In this document: in pieces, positions 3,907 through 50,866 of the stretch
Position numbering within the stretch: position 1 is the first letter of the stretch
How the letters are laid out: each line of letters opens with the position of its first letter
DNA from: Macrostomum lignano
Lineage: Eukaryota
Assembly (NCBI GenBank): GCA_002269645.1
Contig: NIVC01000110.1
Location: 186,001 to 250,000, forward strand
Direction: 5' to 3'
DNA: 64,000 nucleotides
Made by a program: the position numbers and the translations under genes
The notes under the pieces: model-generated
Seen by the model: only the letters and a program-made list of their open reading frames with translations
Databases searched by the model: none
What the model was told of the DNA's origin: nothing

Positions 3907-23044
<19,138 letters not shown>

Positions 23045-26800: not shown

Positions 26801-28797
26801 GAACTCTCACCCCATGAGATTTAAGCAACGGAACTCTCACCCCATCAGATTTAAGCTACAGAACTCTCACCCTATGAGATTTGAAGCTACGGAACTTTCA
26901 CCCCATGAGATTTAAGTTCTGGAACTCTCACCCCATCAGATTTAAGCTACGGAACTCTTACCCCATGAGATTTAAGCTACGGAACTCTCACCCCATCAGA
27001 TTTAAGCTACGGAACTCTTACCCCATGAGATTTAAGCTACGGAACTTTCACCCCATGAGATTTAAGTTCTGGAACTCTCACCCCATCAGATTTAAGCTAC
27101 GGAACTCTTACCCCATGAGATTTAAGCTACGGAACTCTCACCCTATGAGATTTGAAGCTACGGAACTTTCACCCCATGAGATTTAAGTTCTGGAACTCTC
27201 ACCCCATCAGATTTAAGCTACGGAACTCTTACCCCATGAGATTTAAGCTACGGAACTCTCACCCCATCAGATTTAAGCTACGGAACTCTTACCCCATGAG
27301 ATTTAAGCTACGGAACTTTCACCCCATGAGATTTAAGTTCTGGAACTCTCACCCCATCAGATTTAAGCTACGGAACTCTTACCCCATGAGATTTAAGCTA
27401 CGGAACTCTCACCCTATGAGATTTGAAGCTACGGAACTTTCACCCCATGAGATTTAAGTTCTGGAACTCTCACCCCATCAGATTTAAGCTACGGAACTCT
27501 TACCGCATAAGATTTAAGCTACGGAACTCTCACCCCATGAGATTTAAGCTACAGAACTCTCACCCTATGAGATTTGAAGCTACGGAACTTTCACCCCATG
27601 AGATTTAAGTTCTGGAACTCTCACCCCATCAGATTTAAGCTACGGAACTCTTACCGCATAAGATTTAAGCTACGGAACTCTCACCCCATGGGATTTGAAG
27701 CTACGGAACTCTTATCCAATGAGACTTAAAGCTACGGAAGCTGTAAAATAAGCATATCACACTTACGGACAAGCAGTAGAAGCCGAAGTGCACAGAAGGC
27801 AGGTAGCAACCGATGAGGCCAACGCAAATGCCAGCTTGATCAATGCTGAGCCAACGCCAAAACGCTCGCTCCGAATGGCACTTGAATGTGTGATAGCCTG
27901 ACGAGCAGAGCATACAGAACTGTAAAATAATTAAATTACGAGCGTAAAATGCGGTTTGCTCTACTTAAACTAGCTAAATTTAGAAAAATGATATCAACAG
28001 TGTATAAAAATAGATTTTAACTGACCTGAAAACACATTAGCGCTCCAGTAACAATGAGATGATCGGCCAATGTGCCATTATACAGAGGAATGAATATTAT
28101 GTTATCGACCAGCATGAGCAGGAAGAATAGGCCGAATCCAAATAGATGCGACCAGATGTTTATGGTCTCATTGGTCCATCGGAATACGCTGAAATTTAAT
28201 TTAATTAGACTTCAGTTTTTTAGTCATTGGAGTTAAGCTTAAAAGTTGAGGCCCAGCAGCTGAGGATCTGGGAGGCTGGCCCAGCAACTGACACTCTGGG
28301 AGGCTGGCCCAGCAACTGAGGGTCTGGGAGGCTGGCCCAGCAACTGAGGGTCTGGGAGGCTGGCCTAGCAACTGAGGGTCTGGGAGGCTGGCCCAGCAAC
28401 TGAGGATCTGGGAGGCTGGCCCAGCAACTGAGAATCTGGGAAGCGTACTATCTAGACTCTAGAGTGTATCCATTAAACCTGACAGTCCTCACCTCCTGAT
28501 GCAGCCGAAGCCTGACAGGTATGCTGTGTACCCCTCCCGGATGTGGCCGTTATGCCGCAGGAAGTGTGGCACATCGCTGTACTTCAAAACGTCAATGTCT
28601 GCCGTGTGGCACAGGGCAGTCACCGCGCCTCTTTGCCGCACCCCATCCTCTGCGCCAGCTGTCATTGAGGTCCCGAGTTCGAGCTCCGTAGTGTCCAATT
28701 TAATGTCCAACACATGGAAACTCGAACGCGATCCCGCTGAGCGTCGGAGACCGCTGCCCAGGGCGGCACCAGGGCCCGACAGCATGGCTGTTGCCAT
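23802..28797 (-). CDS. PAQR3: Progestin and adipoQ receptor family member 3-like (7TM, HlyIII/PAQR), 6 exons, about 346 aa
   Basis: Exons 28797-28493, 28188-28026, 27919-27767, 26374-26177, 24902-24812, 23932-23802 (sum 1041 nt), all GT-AG and phase-consistent. Motifs: NGHIREGY, WTNETINIWSHL, CMLCSSGYHTFKCH, DQAGI..G..G.Y, PAVHWVYLNGG, FYVSKFPEC..PG, YIGSSHQWWH. Confidence 0.93.
23965..24762 (-). repeat. 28-bp minisatellite family X (PAQR3 intron 5) with about 351-bp higher-order duplication
   Basis: Plus-strand unit ACTGAGGATCTGGGAGGCTGGCCCAGCA; the variant GACACTCTGG occurs at 24000 and 24351. Confidence 0.94.
25205..26040. repeat. 20-bp/40-bp dimeric minisatellite (PAQR3 intron 4)
   Basis: Alternating ATGATCCCAAATGAGATTCC and ATGATCCCACATAAGACCCC. 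Confidence 0.95.
26465..27735. repeat. 30-bp minisatellite with 271-bp higher-order repeat (PAQR3 intron 3)
   Basis: Unit GAGATTTAAGCTACGGAACTCTCACCCCAT; identical blocks begin at 26881, 27152 and 27423. Confidence 0.95.
28252..28443 (-). repeat. 28-bp minisatellite family X (PAQR3 intron 1)
   Basis: About 7 copies of the same unit as intron 5, including the GACACTCTGG variant. Confidence 0.93.
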
Positions 28798-33227: not shown

Positions 33228-33964
33228 TTCAGTGACTCCACAAGTGGACTCACACAAGGACTTCACGGGGATCCTGGGAGTGATAGACTGAGTCATGGTC
33301 AACATCAGATCAAACATCAAATTTTCGTTCCTCGCTAATCTTGCTTTTTGCAAATAAAATTAATTGATGTTGACTAAGCATAAGCATAATCATGAGCATA
33401 ATAAGCATAAGCAGCTTAAGAATAACATATTTTACGGTTATTCTGTGTTGGCGCCAATTCAAGTTAACGTGGCAGTAAAACAATTCTCAATTGTGCGCGC
33501 GAATTCAAAATCTTTTAAGAATTGAGTGTAGCAAATTTGTCTAAGAGACTCATCGAGATTGAGATTTAGCTACTTTGTATCCTGAGGCTAAGATGCAATG
33601 CTTTAACCCTGCCATTGCTTTAAAGGCCAGTAAAAGACGAAAAGACCACCCAGAGCAATAAAACTTCGGTAAGGAATGAAAAATTCGTCAATTCTATTCA
33701 ATAAAAGAGTTACAACTCACCCCTCCGAGTCCAGTTGCAATTGTCTGCAGGTGCACACAGCTACACAGAGCCCCAATATGCTCATACTCGTATACATGCT
33801 CATCATTCTCAGCAGTCCGCATTCATTTAAAGTCCGACTCCATCCTCTGCACACATCAGTGTACACTTCGCTTCACAACGGAAGGCGTTCTTCCGTCACT
33901 CGGCAACCGCATTCAGTTTATGCAAATTTAAATTCGAGTTCGCTTTTCATTTTCGCGTCAAAGC

Positions 33965-35930
33965 CCAGTTCGCTCGGCTTGAATCATTTGCAAAAAGCAG
34001 CTGAACGACCCGGCCTTGGAGACAATAAGAGCCAGATCGGGCACACAGTCACTGTGCGGTAAGTGACTGACAAGTCGTGCACTTTTATCGTGCATTTTTG
34101 TTGGGGAATCTCAAGGAACGATCGGGCATCTCAGGGCACATCTCACGGGGGTCATAGCTTCTTTTTTTCAGCGACGTTACCGGCTCACCACGCTCGGATA
34201 TTCAAACTGAATAGGAAAAGTGCTTCACTTGAATAACTTTTTAAGAAGACAATAAGAAAGGCTCGTGTAGAGATGAGGAAAGAGTTGTAAGTGACGCTGC
34301 TTTCTCGTTTTATCCTCTGAGACGCGCCATGGAAGGGACCTCGATGAGGTGTCTCGGCGTTTCTAGACGACTTGAATCAGCCCACCTTTGGGCTCCATTT
34401 CAGTGCATGAGTTCACCTAATTTTCCTTTTTCCCTAATTTTCATTTCCACAGCCATTATATAGTTTGCTCACCTTCAACAAGCTGGTTAAGTGACACAAC
34501 TGAACGATCCGGTCTTGGTGCCAATAAGAGGTTCTGTCGCGTCGAAGGGCGCACAGCGACTGAGCGGTAAGTGACTGACAGCTGGAGCACTCTTATTTTT
34601 GTGCTTCTGTTGCTAAATCTCCTCTGGGGGACAGTTTCAGGTAAAAAATCTCATCGAGCCAAGTTGCATGTGAACGGATATCAGGGAGCCAATTAGTCTC
34701 AAATGAGGGGCCCTCAGGTAGTCAAAGTTGATGGCTTATCAGGGGAACAGTCTAAAAGGGAAGCAATGACTTAGGTGAGGGGATCACAAAGGGAACCAAG
34801 ACACAGTGAGCGGCTCCTAAGGGGATCAAAAGCTTATGTGAGGGATTTCAAGGGGTGTAAAGACTCTTTGAAAATCTCAGGGAATCCTAGGGAGAGCCTT
34901 GTCTCCCTGAGATTGCATCACCTGAGTATTTTCTCCCCTTTAGATCCTCAGTTAAGAATTTGATCCCCTTAAGAGCATTCATTCTGTCTTGGTAACCTTT
35001 GAGATCCCCTCACCCGTGTCTTTGATCCATATGTGCACTTCAACTTTGCTTTGGTTTTCTTTAAAGATTCCTCACTTGAGCCTCTGCTGTTCTTGACATC
35101 CTCATCCCCTCACTTGAGCCTCTGCTGTTCTTGACATCCTCATCCCCTCACTTGAGCCTCTGCTGTTCTTGACATCCTCATCCCCTCACTTGAGCCTCTG
35201 CTGTTCTTGACATCCTCATCCCCTCACTTGAGCCTCTGCTGTTCTTGAAATCCTTATCCCCTCACTTGAGCCTCTGCTCTTCTTGACATCCTCATCCCCT
35301 CACTTGAGCCACTGCTCTTCTTGACATCCTCATCCCCTCACTTGAGCCTCTGCTGTTCTTGACATCCTCATCCCCTCACTTGAGCCTCTGCTGTTCTTGA
35401 CATCCTCATCCCCTCACTTGAGCCTCTGCTGTTCTTGACATCCTTATCCCCTCACTTGAGCCTCTGCTCTTCTTCACATCCTCAAGGACTACTTAAGTAT
35501 ATACGTTGCTTTAGTTGTCCTTGGACGTCTTTCTTCTTGAAAAATTCATAATTCAACATTGAATTCAAATCAAAACTACACGTTTCCACTGATTACGTAC
35601 AAAAGTGTATCATTTCTGAAACTCAGCGGCAACGTCAAATCGTGCCAATTTAAATTCTCACCGTAACTTTCTTTTTTACACACAGCAGCTGAAGTTTTCT
35701 CGCCTTCAATAAGCTGGTGACACAACTAAACGCGGTCTCGGTGCCAACAAGAGCCTTCTATCGCCCCCAGGGCGCACAGCGACTGTACTGTAAGTGACTG
35801 ACAGCTGCTGTGCTCTTATTTTGACATTTCTTTTGGCGAATTTCCAGTGGGGACAGTTTCAGGTGTAAAAATCTCATGGAGTCAAGTCTTAGGTGGTGGA
35901 ACGTCAGGGAGCGGAATCTCAAGAGGAGCA
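33965..35930 (+). other. Three dispersed homologous exon-like modules (probably non-coding/5'UTR exons)
   Basis: Copies at about 33965-34130, 34452-34720 and 35686-35930 share CTGAACG..CCGG.CTTGG.G.CAATAAGAG...GGGC.CACAG..ACTG..CG|GTAAGTGACTGACA. Copies 2 and 3 are preceded by polypyrimidine-CAG acceptors. Confidence 0.6.
35071..35485. repeat. 38-bp minisatellite
   Basis: Unit CTCACTTGAGCCTCTGCTGTTCTTGACATCCTCATCCC, about 11 copies (starts at 35071, 35109, 35147 and so on). Confidence 0.95.
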
Positions 35931-36909
35931 GTCTTAGTAGGTGCGGGGATTTCAAGGGGAGCTAAGACTGAAGTGAAGGGATATCAAGAGGAGCAAAAGT
36001 CTCAATTGACAGGATCTAAGGGACTAAAGACTAAACACGGGACTAAAGACGGGATCTAAAGACTCAGATGAGGGAATGTCAAGGGGAGTAGAGACTCAGT
36101 GAGGAAACACAAGAAGAGCAATGACTCAGATAAGGGAATCTCTATATAGTAGAGCGAAGAAACGGATGAGGGGATCTTAGGAGAGCAAAGACTCAGGTGA
36201 TGGGACATCAGGGAGCAAAGTCTAAGGTAGGAGACCAAAGACTCAAATGAGGGGATGTTAAGGGTAGCAAAGAAGCAGGTGAGGGGTATCAAGGGGTACT
36301 ATCAGGAGGCAAACAATGCCACCAGTTACCCAATATTTAGGTTGTAGCAATTGAAGCAAAATAAAGACATGCTAACAATTGCTTGTACACCTTTTTTCGA
36401 TGCAAGCATAGGAAAGGCTTAGGTGTTGAATTTATTTCAACGTAAGGCCTTTCATTTTGAACCAATTTACCGTGACGGATAAATGACCGTGAGAGGTTTT
36501 TATGATCACTTATTCGCTTAAAATATACTAAAAAATAAACAAAGTTCAAATGCAAAGAAAAAAGAAAAGCGAAACCTCTTCATCGCGTTTGCTTAACCAC
36601 TCAGCCCTATTTTTTCTGTCCTGGTTCGGGGCATGTCCGGTTCGTCTGCGTCATCTGCGTCAATCAGTGCGGCCCCCTGGCCTATCACGTATTCTCTACC
36701 CTGCGCTTGTCCTGATTGGCTGTTGAAAGGATCAAGTTATGGTGGTTTGGTAGGGGCGGATCCAGGGGGTGGGGGAAGAGGGCCATGCCCCCCCTCAGCC
36801 GTGGCCAAAAAAAATTTAGCCATACTTTCTTGGCCGGTAACTTTTTTGGCCAAGGTCTATTTTTTAATGTTTGGTTGTAGTTGCTTGGTATACATGTATC
36901 TTGCTCCCC

Positions 36910-38480
36910 AGACCTCTGATTACACAGACCTCTGATTACACAGGCCTCTGATTACACAGGCCTCTGATTACACAGACCTCTGATTACGAGCTACACAGAC
37001 ATCTGATTACGAGCTACACAGACCTCTGATTACACAGACCTCTGATTACACAGACCTCTGATTACACAGGCCTCTGATTACACAGACCTCTGATTACACA
37101 GGCCTCTGATTACACAGGCCTCTGATTACACAGGCCTCTGATTACACAGGCCTCTGATTACACAGGCCTCTGATTACACAGGCCTCTGATTACACAGGCC
37201 TCTGATTACACAGGCCTCTGATTACACAGGCCTCTGATTACACAGGCCTCTGATTACACAGGCCTCTGATTACACAGGCCTCTGATTACACAGGCCTCTG
37301 ATTACACAGACCTCTGATTACACAGGCCTCTGATTACACAGGCCTCTGATTACACAGGCCTCTGATTACACAGTCCTCTGATTACACAGACCTCTGATCA
37401 CACAGGCCTCTGATTACACAGGCCTCTGATTACACAGACCTCTGATTACACAGGCCTCTGATTACACAGACCTCTGATTACACAGGCCTCTGATTACACA
37501 GGCCTCTGATTACACAGGCCTCTGATTACACAGGCCTCTGATTACACAGGCCTCTGATTACACAGGCCTCTGATTACACAGGCCTCTGATTACACAGGCC
37601 TCTGATTACACAGGCCTCTGATTACACAGGCCTCTGATTACACAGGCCTCTGATTACACAGGCCTCTGATTACACAGGCCTCTGATTACACAGGCCTCTG
37701 ATTACACAGGCCTCTGATTACACAGGCCTCTGATTACACAGGCCTCTGATTACACAGGCCTCTGATTACACAGGCCTCTGATTACACAGGCCTCTGATTA
37801 CACAGGCCTCTGATTACACAGGCCTCTGATTACACAGGCCTCTGATTACACAGGCCTCTGATTACGAGCTACACAGACATCTGATTACGAGCTACACAGA
37901 CATCTGATTACGAGCTACACAGACCTCTGATTACACAGACCTCTGATTACACAGACCTCTGATTACACAGACCTCTGATTACACAGGCCTCTGATTACAC
38001 AGGCCTCTGATTACACAGGCCTCTGATTACACAGGTCTCTGATTACACAGACCTCTGATTACACAGACCTCTGATTACACAGACCTCTGATTACACAGAC
38101 CTCTGATCACACAGGCCTCTGATTACACAGGCCTCTGATTACACAGGCCTCTGATTACACAGGCCTCTGATTACACAGGCCTCTGATTACACAGGCCTCT
38201 GATTACACAGGCCTCTGATTACACAGGCCTCTGATTACGAGCTACACAGACATCTGATTACGAGCTACACAGACATCTGATTACGAGCTACACAGACCTC
38301 TGATTACACAGACCTCTGATTACACAGACCTCTGATTACACAGACCTCTGATTACACAGACCTCTGATTACACAGACCTCTGATTACACAGACCTCTGAT
38401 TACACAGTCCTCTGATTACACAGACCTCTGATTACACAGACCTCTGATTACACAGACCTCTGATTACACAGGCCTCTAAT
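36910..38480. repeat. 16-bp minisatellite, about 1.6 kb
   Basis: Unit CCTCTGATTACACAG(G/A), about 95 copies with occasional GAGCTACAC inserts. Confidence 0.97.
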
Positions 38481-39329
38481 TACAGGTCCCTCGATCTGAG
38501 TGAAAGAATTTTAAAGTACATGTAGCCTTCTGGCCTGAGGGTATATCGTCTCCTCTTGTTGCAAAGATGCCTATGATAGTCTCCGGTCTGCTGAAGAGGA
38601 CCCCCGACCACGGAGGCTGCCACCACCCCTTCTGAGCAGACGTACCGTCATTCCTGTAGCGACTTCTGCCCTCCTTCAGTTCACCTACCTTGCACTCAGT
38701 CCATTACGAGCTAGTCTGTCGGCCCGTGCTGTCTCATCTCGTGTCGACTTGGCCCGTGCTGTCTCATCTACTTGTCGCTCACCGTCTACTGGGGGTGCGT
38801 CCAGAAGTGTCGTCCGGTCTTCCCAGTTCCAATTCTCTGCCAGGGGCGCTTCAGGGCACAGCTCGCCGGATCGTCTCATTCATTCGTCATTCGAAATTTA
38901 TCTCTTTCCATCATACTCACAATGTAAGAAATTAATTTTTTAAATTAGGGGGTGGGCCGTCCGTCTTGCATAATTATCATATCATTGCATAATGTTACGG
39001 TTGATTCAATTTGACCCAATTCACATACTGTAATACTCGTTGCTAATGTAATATGCAACATGCTCTTTTTGTTTATTGCGTTCCCCAATCCTCAAATATA
39101 CTCAAAAAGATGTTCCGTGTTTGGAGATTGTGTAGCGACTTCAGTTCACCAATCACCTACCTTGTACTTGCTAGACTACTAAGAGTGGCCTCAGGGAATT
39201 TGAACTCTGATGATCAGATGATCAATGTGAGTTGGGTCCTGTATCCAGGCCCCTTAAAATAGATAGTTCAGGCCTTCTAATGCTGAAAGATCTATATTAA
39301 TAATAATAATACCAATCCATTCGCTAACC

Positions 39330-41100: not shown

Positions 41101-41782
41101 AGCACGGATTGCACCTGCGGATTGGTGTAGGTCATGCTTCTGTCACACCAACTCATAGAAGTCCCCCGGAGTCTTTAATAGGCAGAGGTCTTGTGCTCTC
41201 TATTAAAAATCGAACCGCTGCCACCAAACATTAACTGTGCCCCATTATAGATAACTTTAAAAAAATAAATTTGCGCATGTTTTATTCCCAATTGCTAACA
41301 CCAATTGTTCAAATGCGATTATTAGCCAAGTCCTCTCGCTCCATCTATCAGACGTTAACGTATTAATCTCAAGCACAAATAAAATTCTGCGTCACACTCT
41401 AAAACTAAGTACAGTCTTCGCTGCTGAAACTTTTTTCTTCTACCCCTCTAAAAGTACTCGATTTTTCTCATTCTACTGTCCAGTGCAGTCTTTTTGAAAG
41501 TTTCAATGGGTTTATTCCCGCTGGCGCAAAGTGGTTTACTCTTGTGAGTTATTTGGTTAAGTCGAATATAGTATTCAAACCATTTTCTTTAGCAAACAAA
41601 CAAATAGTCAAGTCATAAATCAAAAACGCTTTGTAAAATTACATTTTGCTGATATGTTTATTAAAAGAATTGTAAATTTGTCTGGAATTCACTGAAAATT
41701 TCCCAATTGTCACATTTCAGAGCACCAACAAGAGTCCTCAGAAAAAATTGTCGAACCTGAAATCATCAATTGACAGACTCCA

Positions 41783-44700
41783 ATGGACCAAGTATTTAGT
41801 TCCACTACATCCATCGACGAAGGTACAGAGTTTCTGTCACGCATTGCCACTGAGGAGGACAAGCAGCAGTTCTTTGCTCTGAGCAAAGACGGGAGTAGTG
41901 CTGTTAGCAATGCTTTTGAAAAGCTCGATTTAAACACACTAAAAAACGTTACTGAAAAGCTCGGTCTGCAGCAGTGCCTAGCTGATAAAACTGCTAAAAA
42001 TCAAAGTGTCTTGCACAGAGCAGCTTTCAATACCACGAATCCACAAGTGTTTCTGTGGCTCACTTCCATTGTTGGGGACAAGCAGCAGTTCTTCGCTCGA
42101 GACAGTGACGGCGTCAGTGCTGTTAGCAATGCATTTTCTGAGCTGGATTTAGAGACACTACAGCAAGTGACTAAAATTTTTGGTCTTCCGCAATGCCTAG
42201 CTACAAAAACTGCTAAAAATGAAAGTGTCTTGCATAGGGCAGCTTTCAACGCGGAAAACCCAGCAGTGTTTCTGTGGCTCAGTTCCATTGTCGAGGACAA
42301 GCAGCAGTTCTTTGCTCTGGACAATTACGGGTACAGTGCTGTTAGCATTGCATTTTCTACTCTAGATTTAGCCACTTTAACAAAAGTGACTGAGAAGCTT
42401 GGTCTTCAGCAATGCCTGTCTGCAAAAACTGCTAAAAATCAAAGTGTCTTGCACAGAGCAGCTTTCCGGAAGGCTAATCCAGAAGTGTTTCTGTGGCTCA
42501 TTGACATTGTCGAGGACAAGCAGCAGTTCTTTGCTCAGGACTATGGCGGCTTCATGGCTGTTAGCATTGCATTTGAGAAGCTGGATTTGATCACATTAAA
42601 AAAAGTGACTGACAAGCTTGGTCTGCAACAGTGTCTGGCAGCAAAAACTGCAAAAAATGAAAGTGTCTTGTACAGAGCAGCTTTAAATGCTGCGAATCCG
42701 GCAGTGCTTTTGTGGCTCCTTTCCATTGTTAAGGACAAGCAGCAGTTCTTTTTTTTGAACGATCATGGGTACAGCGCTGTTAGCGCTGCGTTTTTGAAGT
42801 TAGATTTAGACACATTAAAACAAGTGACTGAGAAGCTCGGTCTGCAGCAGTGCCTGGCTGCAAAAACTGCTAAAAAACAAAGTGTCTTGCACAGGGCAGC
42901 TTTCAACACGAAGAATCCGGCAGTGTTTCTGTGGCTCATTGACATTGTCGAGGACAAGCAGCAGTTTTTTGTTCTGGACGATTTCGGATACAGCGCTGTT
43001 AGCGATGCATTTTCTTTTCTAGATTTAGACACATTAGAACAAGTGACCAAAAAGCTCGGTCTTCAGCAATGCCTGGCTGCTAAAACAGCTAAAAACGATA
43101 GCGTCTTGCACAGGGCAGCTTTTAACACGGCGAAACCGTCAGTGTTTCTGTGGCTGATTGCCATTGTTGAGGACAAGCAGCAGTTTTTTGTTCTGGACGA
43201 TTTCGGATACAGCGCTGTTAGCGATGCATTTTCTTTTCTAGATTTAGACACACTAAAAGAAGTGACCAAAAAGCTTGGTCTGCAGCAGTGCCTGTCTGCA
43301 AAAACTGCTAAAAAACAAAGTGTCTTGCACAGGGCAGCTTTCAACACGAAGAATCCGGCAGTGTTTCAGTGGCTCACTTCCATTGTCGAGGACAAGCAGG
43401 AGTTCTTTAATCGTGATATTGATGGGAATAATGCTTTGCATATCGCTTTTCGCCATCAAAATACGACAACACTGAATTACCCAATCGAGAAATTTGAGTT
43501 GACAAAATGTCTGACTATTGATAATCATCTGCAGCAAACCCAATTTTATCTTTCTGCTGTCAATTGTACTCATCCAGATGTTTTTCGATGGCTATTGGAT
43601 CGAGTCCAAAATAAGGATCGACACGTTTTGTTTGATTTTTTTAAAACGGACTCTGAAGGCAATAGTATGTTACACGCAGTGTTCATAAATCTGAACCCGT
43701 TCTGTGATTCAGATGGATTACAGCTACTCATCGATCGCATAAAATGTCTTGTTGATAATGGCGTTGATCCTGCAGCTGAAAACAAGCAGAAGCATAATTG
43801 TTTTTTTGCTTCAGTGGCCAGTGAAATAAACTTGAAAGAAGCTTTGGACGCTCTTATGACGTCTTCTCTTGCAAAGGTTTTTAAAAGCCTCCAAAGAAAC
43901 TCGGAAGGTATGCACGTGACTCACGTTTTTTGCACAAAGTACGAGCTTCCGATGATTGCAGACGAGTTAAGCAGGCTTTGTGGTCTCAGTCTTGAAAAAC
44001 TTTTAGATGTTCGAGTCGCCACCGGTCCATTTAAAGAGGCGAAATGTTTGCACTTTGCCTGCGAATGTGGCAAAAAAGAAAACATCAAATATCTTCTAAA
44101 GCATGATGCGAAACTGGAGGATGAGACGGCAGCTGGGCAGACGTGCGTAGATTTTGCCTGCAACAAGGAGATGCTCGAAGTTCTTTTTGAGCTAGCAGAT
44201 GACATCAATGAAATTCCAAAAGAGAAGTCATTTACCCTTAGAGAACTGCTCAAGTTAGTGGATGTTGCAAAGAGGGCACTCAAACTTCCTGACAAACAGA
44301 GTGCACGGAATTACTTGACTCAGTTCAACGACTCCTCGCTCAAGGCTAGCATTGAAGATGACATGAAAAAAGGACAAGAAGCTGGCATGATGCCAAAGTC
44401 TGAAGAATCTGCAGAAGTTCAGATGCTGTTCAGAGCCTTCGAGCTGGATTCAACGGAAATGCTGCGCAGCTTGATCAGTTTGGGCTTTGCCATCGATGAG
44501 ATTGATGAGCAGTTTTCTCTTCATATTTTAACCCAGATTCGTAAAAACCAGCAAGGTTCAAAGTCTCCCATAATAGCGACTCTGCAGCAGTTTTTCTCAG
44601 AGCGAGACAGAAATTCAAAAACCCTAGTGCTTATGGAATATGCTATACTGCTCGAGAAACCAAAGCTTTTAACCGACCTCATGCTGCTGCCTCAATTCGA

Positions 44701-46922
44701 CATCATCCCTCAGACCCTGAGGTTGCTTATTTATTTAAAGCTGAACTTCAGGTCAAGTAAAAGCGAAACTATGCAGAAGGTGCAATTTCGAGCGTTGAAT
44801 GTTGTCGTCAACATCCTGGACCATCTCTATGTTGATGGCGATGAAGATGATCGGAAAAATCTCTTCAACTACCTGACTGGCTCGTTTTGTACTTCAGGTA
44901 AACAGTCTGCTGCTGGGCCGAGGTTTCTGCCACCAATTGAATCCGTTTCTCGACCTGCGAAGAAGCCTTCAAATGAAGTTGATAAAGAGTTTGTGTCAGT
45001 CATGCATCTTGTGGAGACTCTGGACTGTGACGACTTGTTCGCGACTGACTGCATCAGCAATTTGGTAGATCAGCAGTGGAAAAAGCCTCCACCGTTGCCC
45101 TGGAGCAGCTCTCCGCACTGCTGCACCGGCAAGCGGCCTGAAGGTGCAACAATTCAGCAGAGATATGTAATACATGCCGTCTCTTTCCTGCTCTTCCTGC
45201 TCTACTTTGCCTGGTACGTGACGGACTTCAGTCGGACCAAGCAGTCTCCAGTTCCAGACATCATCCTGCTGTCGTACGCACTGTCCTTCACTCTGCAGGA
45301 AATCAATGATTTTCTAAACAATATGTCTCTGAAGGACGTGACAATTTTTGGCCGCCATCTAAAGGTTCCAGGCTACTTCACGGACCTGTTCAACTACTTT
45401 GACATGGCTGGGCTGCTGCTGATGTGGGCAGGTCTGGTCCTGAAGCTGCGCGGCGAGCTCACCGGCCCCATCCTCCTACGCAGCAGTCAGGTTGTGCTCA
45501 GCGCCTCATTTCTGCTACTGGGATTCCGCTCTGTGGCCCTGCTCAGCTACTTCAAAGTCACCGGGCCGAAGATCAATATGCTCAAAAGCTTGCTGTTCAA
45601 AGACCTGCTGCCATTCATATTGATCTTGCTGGTGCTGGTGTACTCATTTGGTATCTTTTTCTTCAACCTGCTGTTTCCGGCTTTCTCAGACTCAAGAGAT
45701 GCTCAGGCTCTGACAAAGGTGTTCACCGTACCCGTGTCACTGGCGTTTGGGATCTTCGAAAGCGTGATTTTCGAGTCCTGCAATCCTGGCACGCTCGCAA
45801 CTGGGAAGAACTTCCTTCCAAATGAGAAGCCCTGTGCGGATGAAGAAGGAAAAAGGGCTTACGATGGAATTCTGATGTTCGTGTACCTCCTTCTGGTGAA
45901 CATCGTGATGTGGAACCTGCTGATCGCGCTGTTCAGCCGCACTGTGACGAAGTTGGCGAGCAGAGCGGAGGTTCTGTGGCGCAAGAATCTGTTCGAGCTG
46001 CTGCGGGAGTTCGCGGAGGTCAGTCCAGTTCCGCCGCCGCTGTCGTTCCCGCACTACGCCTGGAAACTGCTGCGGAGGTGTCGGTGCGAGCGGCGCTCCG
46101 GCAGAGTGGGACCTGACGGTTCTGAGGTAAGGCCACAGCTTAGCCAATATTGTCAAGTCAGACTTTTCTCGTGTACAGAAGCAGAGTAAGTTACTTTTCT
46201 TTATTTCGGATAGGAAAAGCTCTTCGTATTTTCTTATACTTTGTGGAACTCAATTTATTAAAAAGATTGATTACGCTTGAAGCAGCTAGGTTTATCGTCG
46301 ATGAAATTAAAGTCTTACTTAAATCTTTATGTGATTTGGCATTATAGTTAGAATAAAAAATTCACGATATTCACAACGTACATCGTACTGCTTACATCAA
46401 AAGTGTACCTTTGGCTGACTGAGTGGCCCGTCTAGGTCTTCTTTGGCTATGATAAAGCGTATGTTTCGGTGACTGAATGCATTTACGAAATTTTGGTTAA
46501 AACAAAAACCTAAGTGCACTAAACTTTTGACTCTCCAGCCGTGGTGGCAGAACAAAAAAGACTTCAGCGGCTACCCAGAAGGCTACAAGCGTTTCCTGAT
46601 TTACCAGGCCAAACGGCTGCGGGAGCACCGGCCCCGGCTGCAGCGGCCTGTGGAGAGGCACAAGGGCGACACCGATGTGCTCAAGGCGCACGTAGAGAAC
46701 CAGGCCCAGGACTTGCGGGATGATGTGCTCACTGCTCAGAGAGAAGATAATGCGAGAATTGAGGCACACTTGAAAGACTCAATTGACTCAATTGAAACTC
46801 AATTGAATGAAAAAACTGAAGAAATTCGGCAACGGCAGCGAAAGCACAGAAGGAAAACGAAGAAGCAATTGTCCGAGATAACGAACATGTTGAAGCAGAT
46901 GCAGCAGCAGATGCAGCGGTGA
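41783..46922 (+). CDS. TRP-family cation channel: N-terminal ankyrin-type tandem array plus TRPM-like TM domain and C-terminal coiled coil, about 1575 aa
   Basis: Exon 41783-46126 (donor GAG|GTAAGG) joins exon 46539-46922 (acceptor TCCAG|) in frame. Seven 219-bp (73-aa) units start at 41858+219n. Further ankyrin motifs (CLHFACECGK, TCVDFA) and six hydrophobic helices: 'YFTDLFNYFD', 'GPKINML', 'NIVMWNLLIALFS', TRP-box-like 'LWRKN', 'SPVPPPLS'. An in-frame stop lies 12 nt upstream of the ATG, but an upstream exon via the CAG at 41774-41776 is possible. Confidence 0.9.
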
Positions 46923-48529
46923 GGAAAATTGTCAAGGTTGTCCAATTTATACACAAGGACCACTAGGAACACTTCACAAGTCTAGTAGTCCTTGTTTATA
47001 CACTTGCGTCATTTAGGAATGGCACACGCTCAAAACTCTTGCGGAGCAAATAGCTTACGCGCATTCGAAGCAAAGGTTATTTTAGGGTTTTTACGAGAAA
47101 TTTGGGCCGTATTGCAGCGCAGATTTCATCACTCTGTTTCAGCTTTCAAATAGAATTAAATTGTAATTTTTTTGTCAATTTCCAGACTTTCGGACTCAGC
47201 ATGCAAATGAGCAGCTCGTGTTTTCTGATGGTCGTCATTATCTCCACAGCAATTTCTAATTAATCACACGAACATCGATCGCTTTATGAGCAAATCTGCC
47301 ATCTTCTGCCAAATTTTCGTGAGAGCCCTCAGAACCTCAGCCGTTTTTACAATAGGCTGCATTGACTATTTTAGAAATGGCTATAATACTCTGCTGGTGA
47401 TAGAAAGTTACAGAAAGTATAACTGCTACCAATCAGAAAGCTATTCAAAATTTATAGACACTTTCCGTTATTTCACGAACAAATTTTGTAAAAACAAAAC
47501 ATCTACATCGGGACTTTATTCGGTGATGTAGAGTATTATCCCTGAAAATGTTTTTTATCCATAATTTATGTGAGACGAAACATGCCTTTTTAGGATTTTT
47601 TATCAAGAACTGTTTTCCTTTTTAATTCATAACCTTGCTATTTGATTTTTATTTTTACTGGAACGAAATTGGTAAAAGCCTCTGAATCTTGGAGAATCGA
47701 ATTTCACGTTGCAGTTGACAATGCTTTGGTCTAAATGTAGGCACTGCTGTTGCCGCTCGATGTCGGCTGTGAAAGTCGTGCACAGACACGCGGTCGTAGC
47801 CGGTCTCGAAGTGCAACCGCTCTGAAGCTTGCAATAGCTCGTAATGGCGTAGTCATCAAGGGTCTCTGATCGTGGCGCAGCAATCCAGGTTTATTTATAA
47901 TTACAGGGTATCATTTTCAATGTCATAAAGTGCTCAGAATTCCGGGCATATGCACCGTGTCGATTCGTAGCCCTCTAGAGCACCCAGTCACACTCGCTCG
48001 CCTTAGGTTATTGTTCTGATGATAATTGTCCTTCTGTTGCGTATGTCACTGTTTTAACTGGCAAGGTTATGAGTTCGAGCGGAACATTTCCTTATTTTCT
48101 TACCATGGCATCATTAGTGCTCCACCAGCTGCTATGTTTGAAATCTGTATTGAACCAATACTGTGACAAATATTCTATCAAGTGAAACAGAAAATCCTAT
48201 ATCAAGTGATTACATGAAACTCTTCTGGACTCGCTAATTACGTCCTGAGCTCTTTTAAGTCCTGACCTATATGAGTGATCCTTTTCTGGAAACTCAATGA
48301 CCTGCAGCGAAAGCTTTGATTTTGGGTCAGTGTTGGATACTTACTGTTAAGCAAAGCTGGAATTGCTTTTTTAAAATCAGAGAGCACAGTGTACTTCCTT
48401 GTTCTGCTACCATGCTTCTTTTTGTTTAGTTTTTGTTCCTTTATTATTGCTCGTGCATATCAGTGACACTAATATTATGTGAGATTTTTTTAACGCCCTG
48501 TTTCTTACATGTTTTCGGAAATGTTCCGT

Positions 48530-50230
48530 TGCTAACACGTTATTGTGAATGTTCCGTTGCTAACATGTTTCTTTGAATGTTCCGTTGCTAACACATTTTT
48601 GTGAATGTTCTGTTGCTAACACGTTTTTGTGAATGTTCTGTTGCTAACACATTTTTGTGAATGTTCCGTTGCTAACATGTTTCTGTGAATGTTCTGTTGC
48701 TAACATGTTTTTGTAAATGTTCTGCTGCTTGCATGTTTTTGTGAATGTTCTGTTGCTTACATGTTTTTGTGAATGCCCTGTTGCTTACATGTTTTTGTGA
48801 ATGCCCCATTGCTTACATGTTTTTGTGAATGTTCCATTGCTAACACATTTTTGTGAATGTTCTGTTGCTAACACGTTTTTGTGAATGTTCTGTTGCTAAC
48901 ACATTTTTGTGAATGTTCCGTTGCTAACATGTTTCTGTGAATGTTCTGTTGCTAACATGTTTTTGTAAATGTTCTGCTGCTTGCATGTTTTTGTGAATGT
49001 TCTGTTGCTTACATGTTTTTGTGAATGCCCTGTTGCTTACATTTTTTTGTGAATGCCCCGTTGCTTACATGTTTTTGTAAATGTTCTGTTGCTTGCATGT
49101 TTTTGTGAATGCCCCGTTGCTTACATGTTTTTGTAAATGTTCTGTTGCTTGCATGTTTTTGTGAATGTTCTGTTGCTTACATGTTTTTGTGAATGCCCTG
49201 TTGCTTACATTTTTTTGTGAATGCCCCGTTGCTTACATGTTTTTGTAAATGTTCTGTTGCTTGCATGTTTTTGTGAATGTTCCGTTGCTTACATGTTTTT
49301 GTGAATGTTCTGTTGCTAGCATGTTTTTGTGAATGTTCTGTTGCTTACATGTTTTTGTGAATGATCTGTTGCCAACATGTTTTTGTGAATGTTCTGTTGC
49401 TCAAATGTTTATGTGAATGTTCCGTTGCTTGCATGTTTTTGTGAATGTTCTGTTGCTTGCATGTTTTTGTGAATGCCCTGTTGCTTAAATGTTTTTGTGA
49501 ATGTCCTGTTGCTTGCATGTTTTTGTGAATGTTCTGTTGCTTGCATTTTTTTGTGAATGTTCTGTTGCTTGCATGTTTTTTTGTGAATGCCCTGTTGCTT
49601 AAATGTTTTTGTGAATGTCCTGTTGCTTAAATGTTTTTGTGAATGTCCTGTTGCTAACATGGTTTTGTGAATGTTCCGTTGCTTACATGTTTTTGTGAAT
49701 GTTCCGTTGCTAACATGTTTCTGTGAATGTTCTGTTGCTAACATGTTTTTGTAAATGTTCTGCTGCTTGCATGTTTTTGTGAATGTTCTGTTGCTTACAT
49801 GTTTTTGTGAATGCCCTGTTGCTTACATGTTTCTGTGAATGCCCCGTTGCCTACATGTTTTTGTGAATGTTCCGTTGCTAACATGTTTCTGTGAATGCTC
49901 TGTTGCTAACATGTTTTTGTAAATGTTCTGTTGCTTGCATGTTTTTGTGAATGTTCTGTTGCTTACATGTTTTTGTGAATGCCCTGTTGCTTACATTTTT
50001 TTGTGAATGTTCTGTTGCTTGCATGTTTTTGTGAATGTTCTGTTGCTAACATGTTTTTGTGAATGTTCTGTTGCTTGCATGTTTTTGTAAATGTTCTGTT
50101 GCTTGCATGTTTTTGTGAATGTTCTGTTGCTTGCATGTTTTTGTGAATGCCCTGTTGCTTAAATGTTTTTGTGAATGTCCTGTTGCTAACATGTTTCTGT
50201 GAATGTTCCGTTGCTTACATGTTTTTGTAA
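48530..50230. repeat. 28-bp minisatellite, about 1.7 kb
   Basis: Unit GTGAATGTTCTGTTGCT(AA/TA/TG)CATGTTTTT, about 60 copies. Confidence 0.95.
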
Positions 50231-50866
50231 ATGTCCCACTCTACTCACATGCTTTTTGGTAAAGGCCCCGCTACATACATGGTTTTTTATATATGTCCTA
50301 TTTCTTACATTTATTGTTTTTTGAAAGCTCCGTATGTAGCTTGTATGTTTTTATCTTGCGATACACCATTAATTTTGATGTTATTTTTTTCTTGTCATAG
50401 ACAGTTAACTTAGTTTTTCTTTTGGAGAGCGCAGCAACAAAACTATGTAAAGCCAATAGCATGCAGGGCATGTTTGTTATTATTTTTCTATTTTTTTAGT
50501 CATTGATAGTTTTTTCAAAGCATCTAAATCATTTAAAACATTTCAAAGAGATTTCCATTTACAAAATGAACTTTCAATTATCGCTATATTTAAAAACAAC
50601 TATTTATCAAAAAATTGCCTAATCATACTATCGTGCTACTCAAGTACTCGAATGTCTAAAACATTTCTTTGCTTTCGATTTAAGCTTTTATTTAAAAAAT
50701 AATAAAAAGTTTTTAAGACTTGACTGGATCAAGCAGTAATTACTTAGAAGTTAAGAAACTTTTTAGTTCCGTGTTTTATTTTGTTATTTTACACTACTGG
50801 TGGTGTTTGAAGTGTTTAAATAGTTTTTTTAATCGAAACCAATTACATGAGAAAAACCACTCGCTG

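What the first reader, a model, noticed from the sequence alone, without database searches (positions are those of the whole stretch)
41783..46922. Channel combining a long ankyrin array with a TRPM-type membrane and C-terminal module
Seen: ankyrin-type N-terminus, then six TM helices, NLLIALF, a W-containing TRP helix, PPPL and a terminal coiled coil. Known: ankyrins typify TRPA/N/V/C, whereas the post-S6 'P.LPPP' plus coiled coil typifies TRPM-related channels, which normally have MHR/SLOG domains instead. Nearly all of it is one 4.3-kb exon, unlike the neighbouring genes. Inference: a lineage-specific chimeric TRP subfamily, perhaps retro-derived or exon-shuffled.
Basis: partly seen in the sequence, partly recalled or inferred. 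Interest (0 to 1): 0.75.

Follow-up and report, generated by a model that had tools for sequence, protein, structure and literature searches.

The report
Flatworm ankyrin-type TRPM-like channel gene
This is an intact gene of the free-living flatworm Macrostomum lignano for a cation channel that joins a long ankyrin-repeat arm to a TRPM-type pore. That design is real but already described in parasitic flatworms as the meclonazepam target TRPM_MCLZ, so this is a new relative of a known kind.

Summary
Window 41783-46922 (+) encodes a 1575-aa protein from two exons: 41783-46126 and 46539-46922, separated by a GT..AG intron. From N to C it has eight tandem 73-aa units (each two degenerate ankyrin repeats), Pfam-detectable ankyrin repeats, a helical linker, six TM helices, WNLLIALF, a Trp-containing TRP helix, VPPPL and a long terminal helix.

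The DNA is Macrostomum lignano. The channel domain is clearly TRPM-type: TRPM4 scores 2e-19, and a family profile gives TRPM2 124 bits against 50 bits for the NOMPC channel domain. All top 50 Foldseek hits are TRPMs. No SLOG/MHR1-2 domain is present.

In a tree of 136 channel domains, all ankyrin-bearing, SLOG-less sequences separate from SLOG-type TRPMs with 92-93% bootstrap. They form three clades:
- Clade I is a Macrostomum expansion that contains this gene (100% support).
- Clade II holds the parasitic-flatworm TRPM_MCLZ orthologues, identified by their published pocket residues.
- Clade III is a second Macrostomum group that keeps a recognisable MHR3/4 domain.

Ankyrins in place of SLOG, and a gene of few exons, are published for TRPM_MCLZ (PMC11731825, PMC12861061). 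Nothing supports a retrogene or gene-specific shuffling origin.

Verdict: new member of a known kind, of modest interest.

The parts
41783..46126 (+). Exon 1 (1448 codons), running from the ATG to the donor GAG|GTAAGG. It encodes the ankyrin array, the linker, S1-S6, the TRP helix and the PPPL motif.
   Evidence: ORF; sequence; paralogue tblastn; frame check.
41826..43408 (+). Tandem array of a 219-bp unit, 7.2 copies at 80% identity, lying inside exon 1.
   Evidence: Tandem Repeats Finder, score 1751. Adjacent units give Ka/Ks 0.27-0.55 with no frameshifts.
41852..43612 (+). Eight 73-aa protein units (aa 24-610), about 16 degenerate ankyrin-like repeats. The eighth unit is much more diverged than the others.
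   Evidence: Unit register. hhalign of the units against two consensus ankyrin repeats gives prob 85%, E 6e-6 over 64 columns.
43613..44272 (+). Non-tandem ankyrin region (aa 611-830), including the Pfam-significant repeats at aa 751-809 (nt 44033-44209).
   Evidence: Pfam Ank_2 2.9e-15, Ank_4 4e-10, Ank 4.6e-07.
44273..45142 (+). All-helical linker (aa 831-1120), a divergent TRPM MHR3/4-like region.
   Evidence: There is no Pfam PF25508 hit. hhalign of the 340 aa before S1 gives 90.8% (E 1.2e-6) for clade I against the TRPM_MCLZ clade, and only E 0.04 against canonical TRPMs. The TRPM_MCLZ clade matches TRPMs at 98.3%. In the AF2 model (pLDDT 77.7), Foldseek alignments to TRPM4 and TRPM3 span about 700-770 columns for the 745-residue model.
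45164..45949 (+). TRPM-type channel domain (aa 1128-1389): S1-S4 voltage-sensor-like domain, S5, pore helix with an F-G-I filter (aa 1322-1324), and S6 with WNLLIALF (aa 1377-1384). Ca2+-site positions are E1173, D1176, N1204 and D1207.
   Evidence: phmmer against PDB gives TRPM4 2.2e-19 over aa 1128-1460. A profile of clade I gives TRPM2 124 bits against 50.5 bits for the NOMPC TM domain. Site conservation; hydropathy.
45959..46042 (+). TRP helix (VLWRKNLFELLREF, with W1399 and E1409) followed by VPPPL (aa 1416-1420).
   Evidence: Alignment to TRPM4 YWKAQRYSLIREF...APPL. Across the ankyrin-type sequences compared, W is present in 45 of 47 and the three prolines are near-invariant.
46127..46538 (+). 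The only intron, 412 nt, GT..AG, phase 0.
   Evidence: Sequence. The paralogue locus L001 has a 114-nt intron at the same position.
46539..46922 (+). Exon 2 (127 aa plus TGA): the conserved PWWQNKKDF...LREHRPRLQRPVE segment, then a long charged helix (aa ~1495-1574, nt 46677-46919) that is a putative tetramerisation coiled coil.
   Evidence: tblastn of P0001-P0007. AF2 predicts a single helix, residues 894-975 and 665-744. Heptad signal is weak.

Best explanation
The gene encodes a subunit of a tetrameric, TRPM-type non-selective cation channel of the flatworm 'ankyrin-type TRPM-like' group, the group that contains the meclonazepam target TRPM_MCLZ. In this group the N-terminal SLOG (MHR1/2) nucleotide-binding domain of ordinary TRPMs has been replaced by ankyrin repeats. 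The MHR3/4-like linker, the S1-S4 ligand/Ca2+ pocket, the pore, the TRP helix, the PPP motif and the C-terminal helices remain TRPM-like.

This gene belongs to a Macrostomum lignano-specific expansion (clade I). In that clade the ankyrin arm has been lengthened by recent tandem amplification of a two-ankyrin unit.

Shown: gene structure, domain order, TRPM affinity of the channel domain, absence of SLOG, grouping with TRPM_MCLZ orthologues, paralogue expansion, and coding constraint.

Inferred: it assembles as a tetramer through the C-terminal helix. It is gated with help from Ca2+ bound at the conserved TRPM site in S2/S3/TRP (E1173, D1176, N1204, D1207, E1409), possibly with a small ligand in the same S1-S4 cavity. 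The ankyrin arm acts as a cytosolic docking or regulatory (possibly mechanical) element in place of nucleotide sensing. Its F-G-I filter and its S1-S4 pocket differ from TRPM_MCLZ, so neither meclonazepam sensitivity nor ion selectivity can be transferred.
For: Organism and record. The sequence is 100% identical over 46% of the query to UniProt A0A1I8J8S0 of M. lignano. Six further M. lignano paralogues share 38-78% identity.

Channel domain. It matches TRPM4/3/1/2/8/5/7 at E 2e-19 to 1e-6, and no other named TRP subfamily appears among the 60 PDB sequences shown except one algal 'TRP-like ion channel'. A clade-I profile gives TRPM2 124 bits against 50.5 bits for the NOMPC TM domain, while TRPA1 is listed with its best stretch in the ankyrin part. 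With the AF2 model (pLDDT 77.7, pTM 0.75), the top 50 PDB matches are all TRPMs, with TM-score 0.47-0.55 over about 685-807 aligned columns.

SLOG. None is found by Pfam or by jackhmmer seeded with a TRPM SLOG domain.

Tree. The 47 ankyrin-type sequences separate from the 89 other (mostly SLOG-bearing) TRPM sequences at 92%, and at 92-93.5% after stricter trimming and gamma-corrected distances. Clade I has 100% support.

Identity of clade II. It reproduces the published TRPM_MCLZ pocket pattern: S1 HxxxH, S2 YxxxE, S4 R and TRP Y, with the S4 residue Y in Plagiorchiida and Heterobilharzia and F in cestodes, and R1120K/T1121S in cestodes (against PMC12861061). The Opisthorchis model carries two channel domains, matching the published duplication of exon 3a/3b.

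Ca2+ site. All five positions are conserved or oxygen-bearing across the clades.

Constraint. Ka/Ks against the closest paralogue is 0.32-0.47 in every region.

Gene structure. The same two-exon structure occurs in the paralogue.
Against: - No expression or functional data exist for this gene.
- Pfam does not detect the TRPM2-like (MHR3/4) domain or TRPM_tetra in it.
- Linker homology to canonical TRPMs is only transitive: direct hhalign gives E 0.04.
- The AF2 alignment contained true TRPMs, so the TRPM-like fold of the linker is not independent evidence.
- The first AF2 model, which included the ankyrin part, was poor (pLDDT 45).
- The tree is distance-based (NJ) and unrooted, with no TRPC/TRPN/TRPA/TRPS reference sequences. 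Relationships among clades I, II and III are unresolved (I+II 39-49%).
- Ka/Ks of 0.3-0.5 is high for an ion channel, so some copies may be drifting.
- The filter residue after F-G is Ile, where most TRPMs have Glu (some Gln), so permeation may be unusual.
- Only 3 of the 6 TRPM_MCLZ drug-contact residues are identical.
Confidence: 0.8

Rival explanations
1. It is an ordinary ankyrin-bearing TRP channel (TRPN/NOMPC-like or TRPA-like) whose channel domain merely looks TRPM-like to the eye.
For: The long ankyrin array gives the strongest whole-protein PDB hit to NOMPC (1.7e-77), and TRPA1 also hits. The NOMPC TM region is weakly matched at 50.5 bits.
Against: Four of the five NOMPC stretches, and the listed best stretch of each TRPA1 hit, lie in the ankyrin part. 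The channel domain scores 124 bits to TRPM2 and 80-120 bits to other TRPMs, against 50 bits to NOMPC. TRPM-specific Ca2+-site residues, the TRP helix and the PPP motif are present. All top 50 Foldseek hits are TRPMs.
Confidence: 0.03
2. It is a gene-specific recent chimera, made by retroposition of a TRPM mRNA next to an ankyrin gene or by exon shuffling at this locus.
For: The coding sequence is almost intronless while neighbouring genes are split. The genome is rich in repeats and mobile elements. Some paralogue models are fused to integrase.
Against: The same architecture and the same intron position occur in the closest paralogue. The same domain order occurs in at least 19 M. lignano 50%-identity clusters whose source was checked, and in trematodes, cestodes and a monogenean. 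The ankyrin-type channel domains form one group at 92-93%. TRPM_MCLZ itself has only three exons, with the whole channel domain in one (PMC12861061 section 3.4). If the fusion, and any retroposition, took place, it was ancient and occurred once.
Confidence: 0.04
3. It is a decaying or non-functional duplicate in a hugely expanded family, so the ORF is intact only because the copy is young.
For: Ka/Ks is 0.32-0.47, high for a channel. There are many paralogues and fragments. M. lignano is a recent polyploid (established knowledge). The public gene model is inconsistent with the continuous ORF.
Against: Ks to the nearest paralogue is 0.21-0.44 with no stop or frameshift in 4.7 kb. Ka/Ks is below 1 in all five regions, including between repeat units. 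The splice sites are intact. Every functionally critical TRPM position checked is retained.
Confidence: 0.1
4. The ankyrin-type group is not derived from a SLOG-bearing TRPM. It is an old sister lineage that kept the ancestral ankyrin repeats of group-1 TRP channels.
For: The tree is unrooted, so the 92% split is equally compatible with this view. MHR3/4 of TRPMs are themselves reported to hold degenerate ankyrin repeats (Burroughs 2015, as quoted in PMC13143021).
Against: In an exhaustive search of 1.84 billion representative proteins, every ankyrin-type relative whose source could be traced is platyhelminth, apart from one contig binned as a bacterial MAG. SLOG-type TRPMs occur from choanoflagellates to chordates. 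Clades II and III keep a clear TRPM MHR3/4 domain directly after the ankyrins. Published phylogenies infer an ankyrin-free TRPM-TRPS ancestor (PMC7306681).
Confidence: 0.07

Closest known systems
TRPM_MCLZ (Schistosoma mansoni Smp_333650 and its ~63 orthologues in trematodes, cestodes and monogeneans), called 'TRPM-like' by its authors
   Same: - N-terminal ankyrin repeats in place of MHR1/2-SLOG.
- A TRPM-type S1-S6, TRP helix and PPP motif.
- Cytoplasmic C-terminal helices.
- Very few exons, with the whole channel domain in one exon.
- Channel domains group together against SLOG-type TRPMs (92-93% bootstrap).
- S1 His827, S2 Glu868 and S4 Arg943 equivalents are conserved.
   Different: - It is not an orthologue. 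This gene sits in a separate, Macrostomum-only clade with 100% support.
- The ankyrin arm is much longer: about 830 aa with eight tandem 73-aa units, for 1575 aa in total against 1380 aa.
- Pfam no longer detects the MHR3/4-like linker.
- Only 3 of 6 drug-contact residues are identical (H831 to F, Y864 to F, Y1117 to F), and the key S4 residue is Ala instead of His, Tyr or Phe.
- The filter is F-G-I where most TRPM_MCLZ orthologues have F-E/D-S at the aligned positions.
- Its function and ligand are unknown.
Macrostomum lignano short ankyrin-type TRPM-like proteins (clade III, e.g. UniProt A0A267ES81, A0A1I8GV72; 1120-1365 aa)
   Same: Same species, with ankyrin repeats followed by a TRPM channel domain and no SLOG. 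The PPPL/PPPF motif and the Ca2+-site residues are the same.
   Different: Clade III keeps a Pfam-detectable TRPM2-like (MHR3/4) domain and both S1 histidines of TRPM_MCLZ. It has only a short ankyrin block of about 200 aa and a V-G-E/D filter. It looks closer to TRPM_MCLZ than this gene does.
Canonical TRPM channels (TRPM2, TRPM4, TRPM3, TRPM8; Pfam LSDAT_euk + TRPM2-like + Ion_trans)
   Same: The channel domain shares 25-29% identity. The five Ca2+-coordinating positions of TRPM4 are present (E/Q/N/D/E there, E/D/N/D/E here). Also shared are the S4 Arg, NLLIA in S6, the TRP Trp, the PPP motif after the TRP helix, and the overall fold of linker, TM domain and C-terminal helices in the predicted model.
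   Different: There is no SLOG/MHR1-2 domain, no NUDT9H or kinase domain, and no Pfam TRPM_tetra hit. About 830 aa of ankyrin repeats take the place of the SLOG domain.
TRPN / NOMPC (29 ankyrin repeats plus a TRP channel)
   Same: A long N-terminal ankyrin solenoid ahead of a six-TM TRP pore. NOMPC is the best PDB match for the ankyrin part.
   Different: The channel domain is far closer to TRPMs (124 against 50 bits). The repeats here are about 16 degenerate ones plus a few canonical ones, recently amplified in tandem. No linker-helix or TRPN-type features were tested.

Membership tests
TRPM family (sensu lato) | Six-TM channel domain with TRPM-type sequence (S1-S6, NLLIA in S6) | tested here: met
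   phmmer against PDB gives TRPM4 2.2e-19 and TRPM3/1/2/8/5/7 down to 1e-6. The clade-I profile gives TRPM2 124 bits against 50.5 bits for the NOMPC TM domain. The top 50 Foldseek hits are all TRPMs.
TRPM family (sensu lato) | N-terminal MHR1/2 = SLOG (Pfam LSDAT_euk) | tested here: not met
   There is no Pfam hit at E<=1. jackhmmer seeded with a TRPM SLOG domain finds 43 SLOG proteins in the set but none in clades I-III.
TRPM family (sensu lato) | MHR3/4 (Pfam PF25508, TRPM2-like domain) before S1 | tested here: inconclusive
   There is no Pfam or jackhmmer hit in this protein. hhalign of the pre-S1 340 aa gives 90.8% to the TRPM_MCLZ clade, which matches TRPMs at 98.3%; the direct comparison gives E 0.04. 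The AF2 model aligns over nearly its full length to TRPM4, but true TRPMs were in the alignment used.
TRPM family (sensu lato) | TRP helix with conserved Trp, followed by a PPP motif | tested here: met
   VLWRKNLFELLREF...VPPPL at aa 1397-1420 aligns to TRPM4 YWKAQRYSLIREF...APPL.
TRPM family (sensu lato) | C-terminal tetramerising coiled coil (Pfam TRPM_tetra) | tested here: inconclusive
   There is no Pfam hit. A long helix at aa ~1495-1574 is predicted with pLDDT about 74-84. Heptad enrichment is weak. hhalign of the C-terminus against TRPMs gives 18%.
TRPM family (sensu lato) | Ca2+ site in the S1-S4 domain of Ca2+-dependent TRPMs (TRPM4 E828, Q831, N865, D868, E1068; numbering from my own knowledge) | tested here: met
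   E1173, D1176, N1204, D1207 and E1409 align to these positions. Calcium binding itself was not tested.
Flatworm ankyrin-type TRPM-like group (TRPM_MCLZ type) | Ankyrin repeats in place of SLOG, ahead of a TRPM-type channel | tested here: met
   The description of the type is in PMC11731825 section 3.1 and the PMC12861061 Fig. 1 legend.
Flatworm ankyrin-type TRPM-like group (TRPM_MCLZ type) | Channel domain groups with TRPM_MCLZ orthologues rather than with SLOG-type TRPMs | tested here: met
   NJ bootstrap is 92%, and 92-93.5% with stricter trimming or gamma-corrected distances. The tree is unrooted and distance-based only.
Flatworm ankyrin-type TRPM-like group (TRPM_MCLZ type) | Few-exon gene with the whole channel domain in one exon | tested here: met
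   There are two coding exons here. TRPM_MCLZ has three (PMC11731825, PMC12861061 section 3.4).
TRPM_MCLZ orthologue group proper | Membership of the orthologue clade and conservation of the meclonazepam pocket (H827, H831, Y864, E868, R943, Y1117; S4 H/Y/F946) | tested here: not met
   The gene lies in the separate clade I (100%). The pocket here reads H, F, F, E, R, F with Ala at the S4 position, whereas all clade II sequences that cover these positions show the published pattern.
TRPM_MCLZ orthologue group proper | Cation channel activated by meclonazepam | not testable with these tools
   This needs heterologous expression with Ca2+ imaging or electrophysiology.
TRPN (NOMPC) | TRPN-type channel domain behind about 29 ankyrin repeats | tested here: not met
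   The ankyrin part matches NOMPC, but the TM domain scores 50.5 bits to NOMPC against 124 bits to TRPM2.
TRPA | TRPA-type channel domain | tested here: not met
   The TRPA1 chains listed have their best stretch in the ankyrin region (profile positions 81-564). No TRPA1 appears among the 60 channel-domain hits shown.

The most novel reading that the evidence does not exclude
Clade I may be more than another TRPM_MCLZ relative. It could be a functionally new subfamily in which a TRPM-type pore has acquired a NOMPC-like long ankyrin arm, 20 or more repeats still growing by tandem duplication. Such an arm could act as a tether or gating spring for mechanosensation, or as a large docking platform. 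That would be a convergent replacement for TRPN, a family not listed in the published schistosome TRP inventory. A second, less likely version is that the ankyrin-type lineage is an ancient sister of TRPM+TRPS that retained the ancestral ankyrin repeats.
Probability: 0.1. Interest if true: 0.7.

Novelty: new member of a known kind. Interest (0 to 1): 0.3.

Why it matters
TRPM_MCLZ is a validated anthelmintic target, but its normal activator and the role of its ankyrin arm are unknown.

This analysis shows that Macrostomum lignano, a free-living and genetically tractable flatworm, carries large expansions of the same channel type. At least 19 clusters at 50% identity were traced to it, in two clades. 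One clade looks close to TRPM_MCLZ. The other, which holds this gene, has a greatly lengthened ankyrin arm.

That offers a non-parasitic laboratory model for three questions: what these channels sense, what the ankyrin-for-SLOG swap does, and how the S1-S4 drug pocket varies.

For TRP evolution it adds a documented case against the textbook rule that TRPMs lack ankyrin repeats. It also dates the swap to before Macrostomorpha and Neodermata diverged.

It does not establish a new subfamily.

Tried and rejected
1. Whole-protein homology search. It returned only 7 M. lignano proteins, because ankyrin words filled the candidate list.
2. Profile search with 22 channel domains.
3. AF2 of aa 600-1575 with 11 sequences. 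The model had pLDDT 45 and pTM 0.27, so I did not fold-search it.
4. An 86-sequence alignment for AF2 failed inside the tool. I repeated it with 43 sequences.
5. Supplementary files of PMC12861061, wanted for the Sm.TRPM_MCLZ reference sequence, are not held. I identified the orthologue clade from the published pocket-residue pattern instead.
6. No S. mansoni sequence was recovered. The nearest schistosomatid obtained was Heterobilharzia americana.
7. No TRPC, TRPN, TRPA, TRPV or TRPS reference sequences could be fetched, so the tree has no outgroup. I used PDB bit scores as a substitute.
8. The simple heptad test of the C-terminal helix was weak, so 'coiled coil' stays a prediction.
9. Pfam matches to Baculo_PEP_C, Apolipoprotein and similar families in exon 2 fall below their cut-offs. 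I read them as generic helical or charged-sequence noise.
10. BTB_SANBR, RlmM_FDX, DUF2066 and similar matches in the paralogues report zero significant stretches. I read them as repeat-driven artefacts.

Full report
**What is in the sequence.** Window 41783-46189 holds an uninterrupted 1468-codon reading frame on the + strand. An in-frame TGA lies four codons upstream of its ATG. tblastn of seven database proteins back onto the window, together with the raw sequence, shows that the frame is left at 46126 (TCTGAG|GTAAGG). Coding resumes at 46539 (CTCTCCAG|CCGTGGTGG) and runs to a TGA at 46920-46922. The gene therefore has two coding exons and a 412-nt GT..AG intron, and it encodes 1575 aa.

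**N-terminal repeats.** The first 610 residues consist of eight 73-aa units. At the DNA level this is 7.2 copies of a 219-bp unit at 80% identity, spanning 41826-43408. A profile of the eight units aligns over 64 columns to two consecutive consensus ankyrin repeats (hhalign prob 85%, E 6e-6). The array is thus about 16 degenerate ankyrin repeats. Pfam-significant ankyrin repeats follow it (Ank_2 2.9e-15, best stretch aa 751-809).

**Linker, channel and C-terminus.** An all-helical linker (aa 831-1120) follows the ankyrins. The channel domain occupies aa 1128-1389, with WNLLIALF at 1377-1384. The TRP helix VLWRKNLFELLREF starts at 1397, VPPPL is at 1416-1420, and exon 2 encodes a long charged helix. 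The coiled coil is the weakest item. It is predicted as one long helix (pLDDT about 74-84), but its heptad signal is weak and Pfam TRPM_tetra is not hit.

**Organism and family size.** The protein is 100% identical, over the part covered, to UniProt A0A1I8J8S0 of the free-living flatworm Macrostomum lignano. Six further M. lignano paralogues are 38-78% identical. I then ran an exhaustive HMMER search with residues 1001-1468 against 1.84 billion representative proteins. It gave 712 hits, with a sharp step. About 37 clusters score E<1e-22 at mostly 34-80% identity, and the remainder score around 1e-21 and weaker at 21-32%. Among the strong clusters whose source I checked, all are M. lignano. The exceptions are a 5-kb contig binned as a 'Kangiellaceae' MAG and the Opisthorchis model, which carries two channel domains. 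The next tier holds shorter M. lignano proteins and proteins of parasitic flatworms (Dicrocoelium, Opisthorchis, Schistocephalus, Fasciolopsis, Protopolystoma). Several of the latter are annotated 'TRPM7'. Ordinary TRPMs from molluscs, tunicates and choanoflagellates come only after these.

**What kind of channel domain it is.** Against the PDB, the single sequence matches TRPM4 (2.2e-19), then TRPM3, 1, 2, 8, 5 and 7 over S1 through the TRP region. No TRPA, TRPC, TRPN or TRPV chain is among the 60 sequences shown. A profile of 15 clade-I proteins scores 124 bits to zebrafish TRPM2 over the channel domain. It scores 50.5 bits to the channel domain of NOMPC. Four of the five NOMPC stretches lie in the ankyrin part, and so does the best stretch of each TRPA1 hit.

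**Predicted structure.** A second AlphaFold2 run covered aa 831-1575 with 43 aligned sequences and gave pLDDT 77.7 and pTM 0.75. Its 50 best PDB matches are all TRPMs, with alignments of about 685-807 columns and TM-scores of 0.47-0.55 normalised to the query. The alignment used for that model contained true TRPMs, so the fold of the linker is supportive rather than independent evidence.

**Conserved functional positions.** The five positions that coordinate Ca2+ in TRPM4 (my knowledge: E828, Q831, N865, D868, E1068) are E1173, D1176, N1204, D1207 and E1409 here. They are conserved or oxygen-bearing in almost all ankyrin-type relatives. The S4 arginine, the S6 asparagines, the TRP tryptophan and the three prolines are also conserved.

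**What is missing.** No SLOG/LSDAT domain is found by Pfam or by jackhmmer seeded with a tunicate TRPM SLOG domain. That jackhmmer search recovers 43 SLOG-bearing proteins in the comparison set but none in the ankyrin-type groups.

**The MHR3/4 question.** The Pfam 'TRPM2-like domain' (MHR3/4) is also not detected in this protein. It is clearly present, directly after the ankyrin repeats, in the shorter M. lignano proteins by Pfam, and by jackhmmer also in the parasite proteins. Profile-profile comparison of the 340 residues before S1 gave these results:
- this gene's clade against the parasite clade: 90.8% probability, E 1.2e-6;
- the parasite clade against canonical TRPMs: 98.3%;
- the short M. 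lignano clade against canonical TRPMs: 99.3%;
- this gene's clade directly against canonical TRPMs: not significant (E 0.04).

The linker is therefore best read as a strongly diverged MHR3/4. Only the SLOG part has been replaced by ankyrins.

**Tree.** I extracted 136 channel domains, aligned them and kept 319 columns. I then built neighbour-joining trees with 200 bootstraps. One split separates 47 sequences from 89 with 92% support. The 47 are exactly the proteins with ankyrin repeats and no SLOG, plus fragments. The 89 are the SLOG-type TRPMs, plus SLOG-less models and fragments. The split holds at 92-93.5% after stricter trimming, removal of partial sequences and gamma-corrected distances.

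**The three clades.**
- Clade I has 25 sequences and 100% support. It is the M. lignano long-ankyrin family that contains this gene.
- Clade II has 11 sequences from Neodermata.
- Clade III has 11 sequences: the short M. lignano proteins with ankyrins plus MHR3/4.

The order of the three clades is unresolved (I+II 39-49%). The tree is unrooted and has no outgroup from other TRP families. I could not obtain such sequences with the tools available.

**Comparison with what is known.** The literature search settled the novelty question.
- Park et al. 2024 (PMC10788528) identified Sm.TRPM_MCLZ (Smp_333650) as the schistosome target of meclonazepam. They describe its long N-terminal domain with 'ankyrin-like' repeats and its three-exon gene.
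- Sprague et al. 2024 (PMC11731825, section 3.1) state that it lacks MHR1/2 or SLOG and has ankyrin-repeat modules instead.
- Rohr et al. 2026 (PMC12861061) propose calling the group 'TRPM-like', list 63 orthologues, and note that exon 3 encodes the whole channel domain.

**Clade II is the TRPM_MCLZ orthologue group.** Its members reproduce the published pocket signature position by position. They have S1 HxxxH, S2 YxxxE, S4 Arg and TRP Tyr. The key S4 residue is Tyr in Plagiorchiida and Heterobilharzia and Phe in cestodes. Cestodes also show the R1120K and T1121S variants. The Opisthorchis model carries two channel domains, matching the reported duplication of exon 3a/3b.

**Position of this gene relative to TRPM_MCLZ.** It shares H827, E868 and R943 with TRPM_MCLZ. 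It has Phe at H831, Y864 and Y1117, and Ala at the S4 position. It is therefore a relative and not an orthologue, and meclonazepam sensitivity should not be assumed. Clade III keeps both S1 histidines, S4 Tyr and R1120, so it looks nearer to TRPM_MCLZ.

**Origin of the gene structure.** The closest paralogue (P0002, locus L001) has residues 60-1328 in one 3.8-kb exon. A 114-nt intron sits at the same codon, followed by the same type of terminal exon. Together with the three-exon TRPM_MCLZ gene, this makes intron poverty a shared, old feature of the whole group. It is not a sign of recent retroposition at this locus. The monophyly of the channel domains likewise argues for one ancient ankyrin-for-SLOG swap. 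That swap predates the divergence of Macrostomorpha and Neodermata.

**What is recent.** The lengthening of the ankyrin arm is recent. The 219-bp units are 80% identical. Adjacent units differ at Ks 0.24-0.54 with Ka/Ks 0.27-0.55 and no frame disruption.

**Is it functional?** Against the closest paralogue, Ka/Ks is 0.39 for the tandem ankyrins, 0.47 for the other ankyrins, 0.38 for the linker and 0.32 for the channel domain, with Ks 0.21-0.44. This indicates purifying selection, although relaxed for an ion channel. The splice sites and all checked functional residues are intact. I rate a decaying copy at about 10%.

**Likely mechanism.** The steps below are marked as shown or inferred.
- Shown: the protein has the complete set of TRPM channel elements.
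- Inferred from TRPM structures: four subunits assemble around a central pore, helped by the C-terminal helix.
- Inferred from the five conserved ligand positions: intracellular Ca2+ binds in the S1-S4 domain and is needed for, or potentiates, opening, as in TRPM2, 4, 5 and 8.
- Inferred from TRPM8, TRPM_PZQ and TRPM_MCLZ pharmacology (PMC11731825): the same S1-S4 cavity may bind a small ligand.
- Inferred, and weakest: with no SLOG or NUDT9H domain, nucleotide sensing is lost. The ankyrin arm of about 830 aa provides protein docking, or possibly mechanical coupling.

The filter reads F-G-I, where most TRPMs have Glu or Gln after the Gly. Selectivity cannot be predicted.

**Verdict.** The chimeric-subfamily interpretation is right in substance but was not new when made, and the retro-origin idea is unsupported. 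This is a new, uncharacterised member of the published flatworm ankyrin-type TRPM-like group, belonging to a Macrostomum-specific expansion. The added value is modest. It documents large expansions of this drug-target family in a tractable free-living flatworm. It shows that only SLOG was replaced. It also shows an ankyrin arm still growing by tandem duplication.

Noticed in passing
window 13678-17888 (also 9176-9660, 11872-12616, 18479-19284, 23962-24761, 25214-26042, 26469-27739, 36909-38484, 48498-50234 and others): The window is packed with minisatellite arrays. The largest is a 20-mer, GAGAGGGAGGGGAATGGTGT, in about 210 copies at 95% identity. It gives GC skew near 1.0 over 4 kb and a spurious 1466-aa ORF on the minus strand (13570-17970).
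   Followed up: partly
window 79-876 (-); 8734-9207 (+); 20785-21243 (+): Neighbouring genes include a Fic/DOC-domain ORF (Pfam 6.8e-14). There are also at least two exons of a peptidase M16 (insulinase-like) gene, 12 kb apart, with satellite arrays lying between them.
   Followed up: partly
window 43217-44101; 46917-46925; 47739-47822; 33862-34089: The public model of this gene (UniProt A0A1I8J8S0) differs from the continuous ORF in three ways. It removes an in-frame 885-nt stretch with GT..AG ends. It adds a 5' piece that matches the window at only 88%. It also skips the stop codon by using a donor (CG|GTGAGG) that overlaps it, reaching a 28-aa exon at 47739-47822. That tail is not conserved in the paralogues and may be an alternative C-terminus or a prediction artefact.
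   Followed up: partly
protein P0012/P0159 (NCBI MEE4247282.1, 5.1-kb contig): A contig binned as a 'Kangiellaceae bacterium' MAG encodes a clade-I type ankyrin plus TRPM-like channel, 47% identical in the channel domain. It is almost certainly animal (flatworm-like) DNA mis-binned into a bacterial genome.
   Followed up: partly
proteins P0091 (1781 aa, source unknown) and P0048 (Dreissena polymorpha KAH3749032.1): Other N-terminal variants exist among TRPMs outside the flatworm clade. One has ankyrin repeats ahead of an intact SLOG domain. Another has Mind-bomb SH3 repeats with MHR3/4 but no SLOG.
   Followed up: no
proteins P0007, P0176, P0198, P0199 (M. lignano): Several paralogue models are fusions: P0007 carries two channel domains, P0198 is named for an integrase domain, and P0176 and P0199 are unusually long (2489 and 3003 aa). 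This suggests tandemly arrayed copies and nearby mobile elements in the M. lignano assembly.
   Followed up: no
window 41700-41782: A good splice-acceptor-like site (tcacatttcag|AGC) lies about 60 nt upstream of the ATG. It could be a 5'-UTR intron acceptor or a spliced-leader trans-splice site, which M. lignano is known to use (my knowledge).
   Followed up: no
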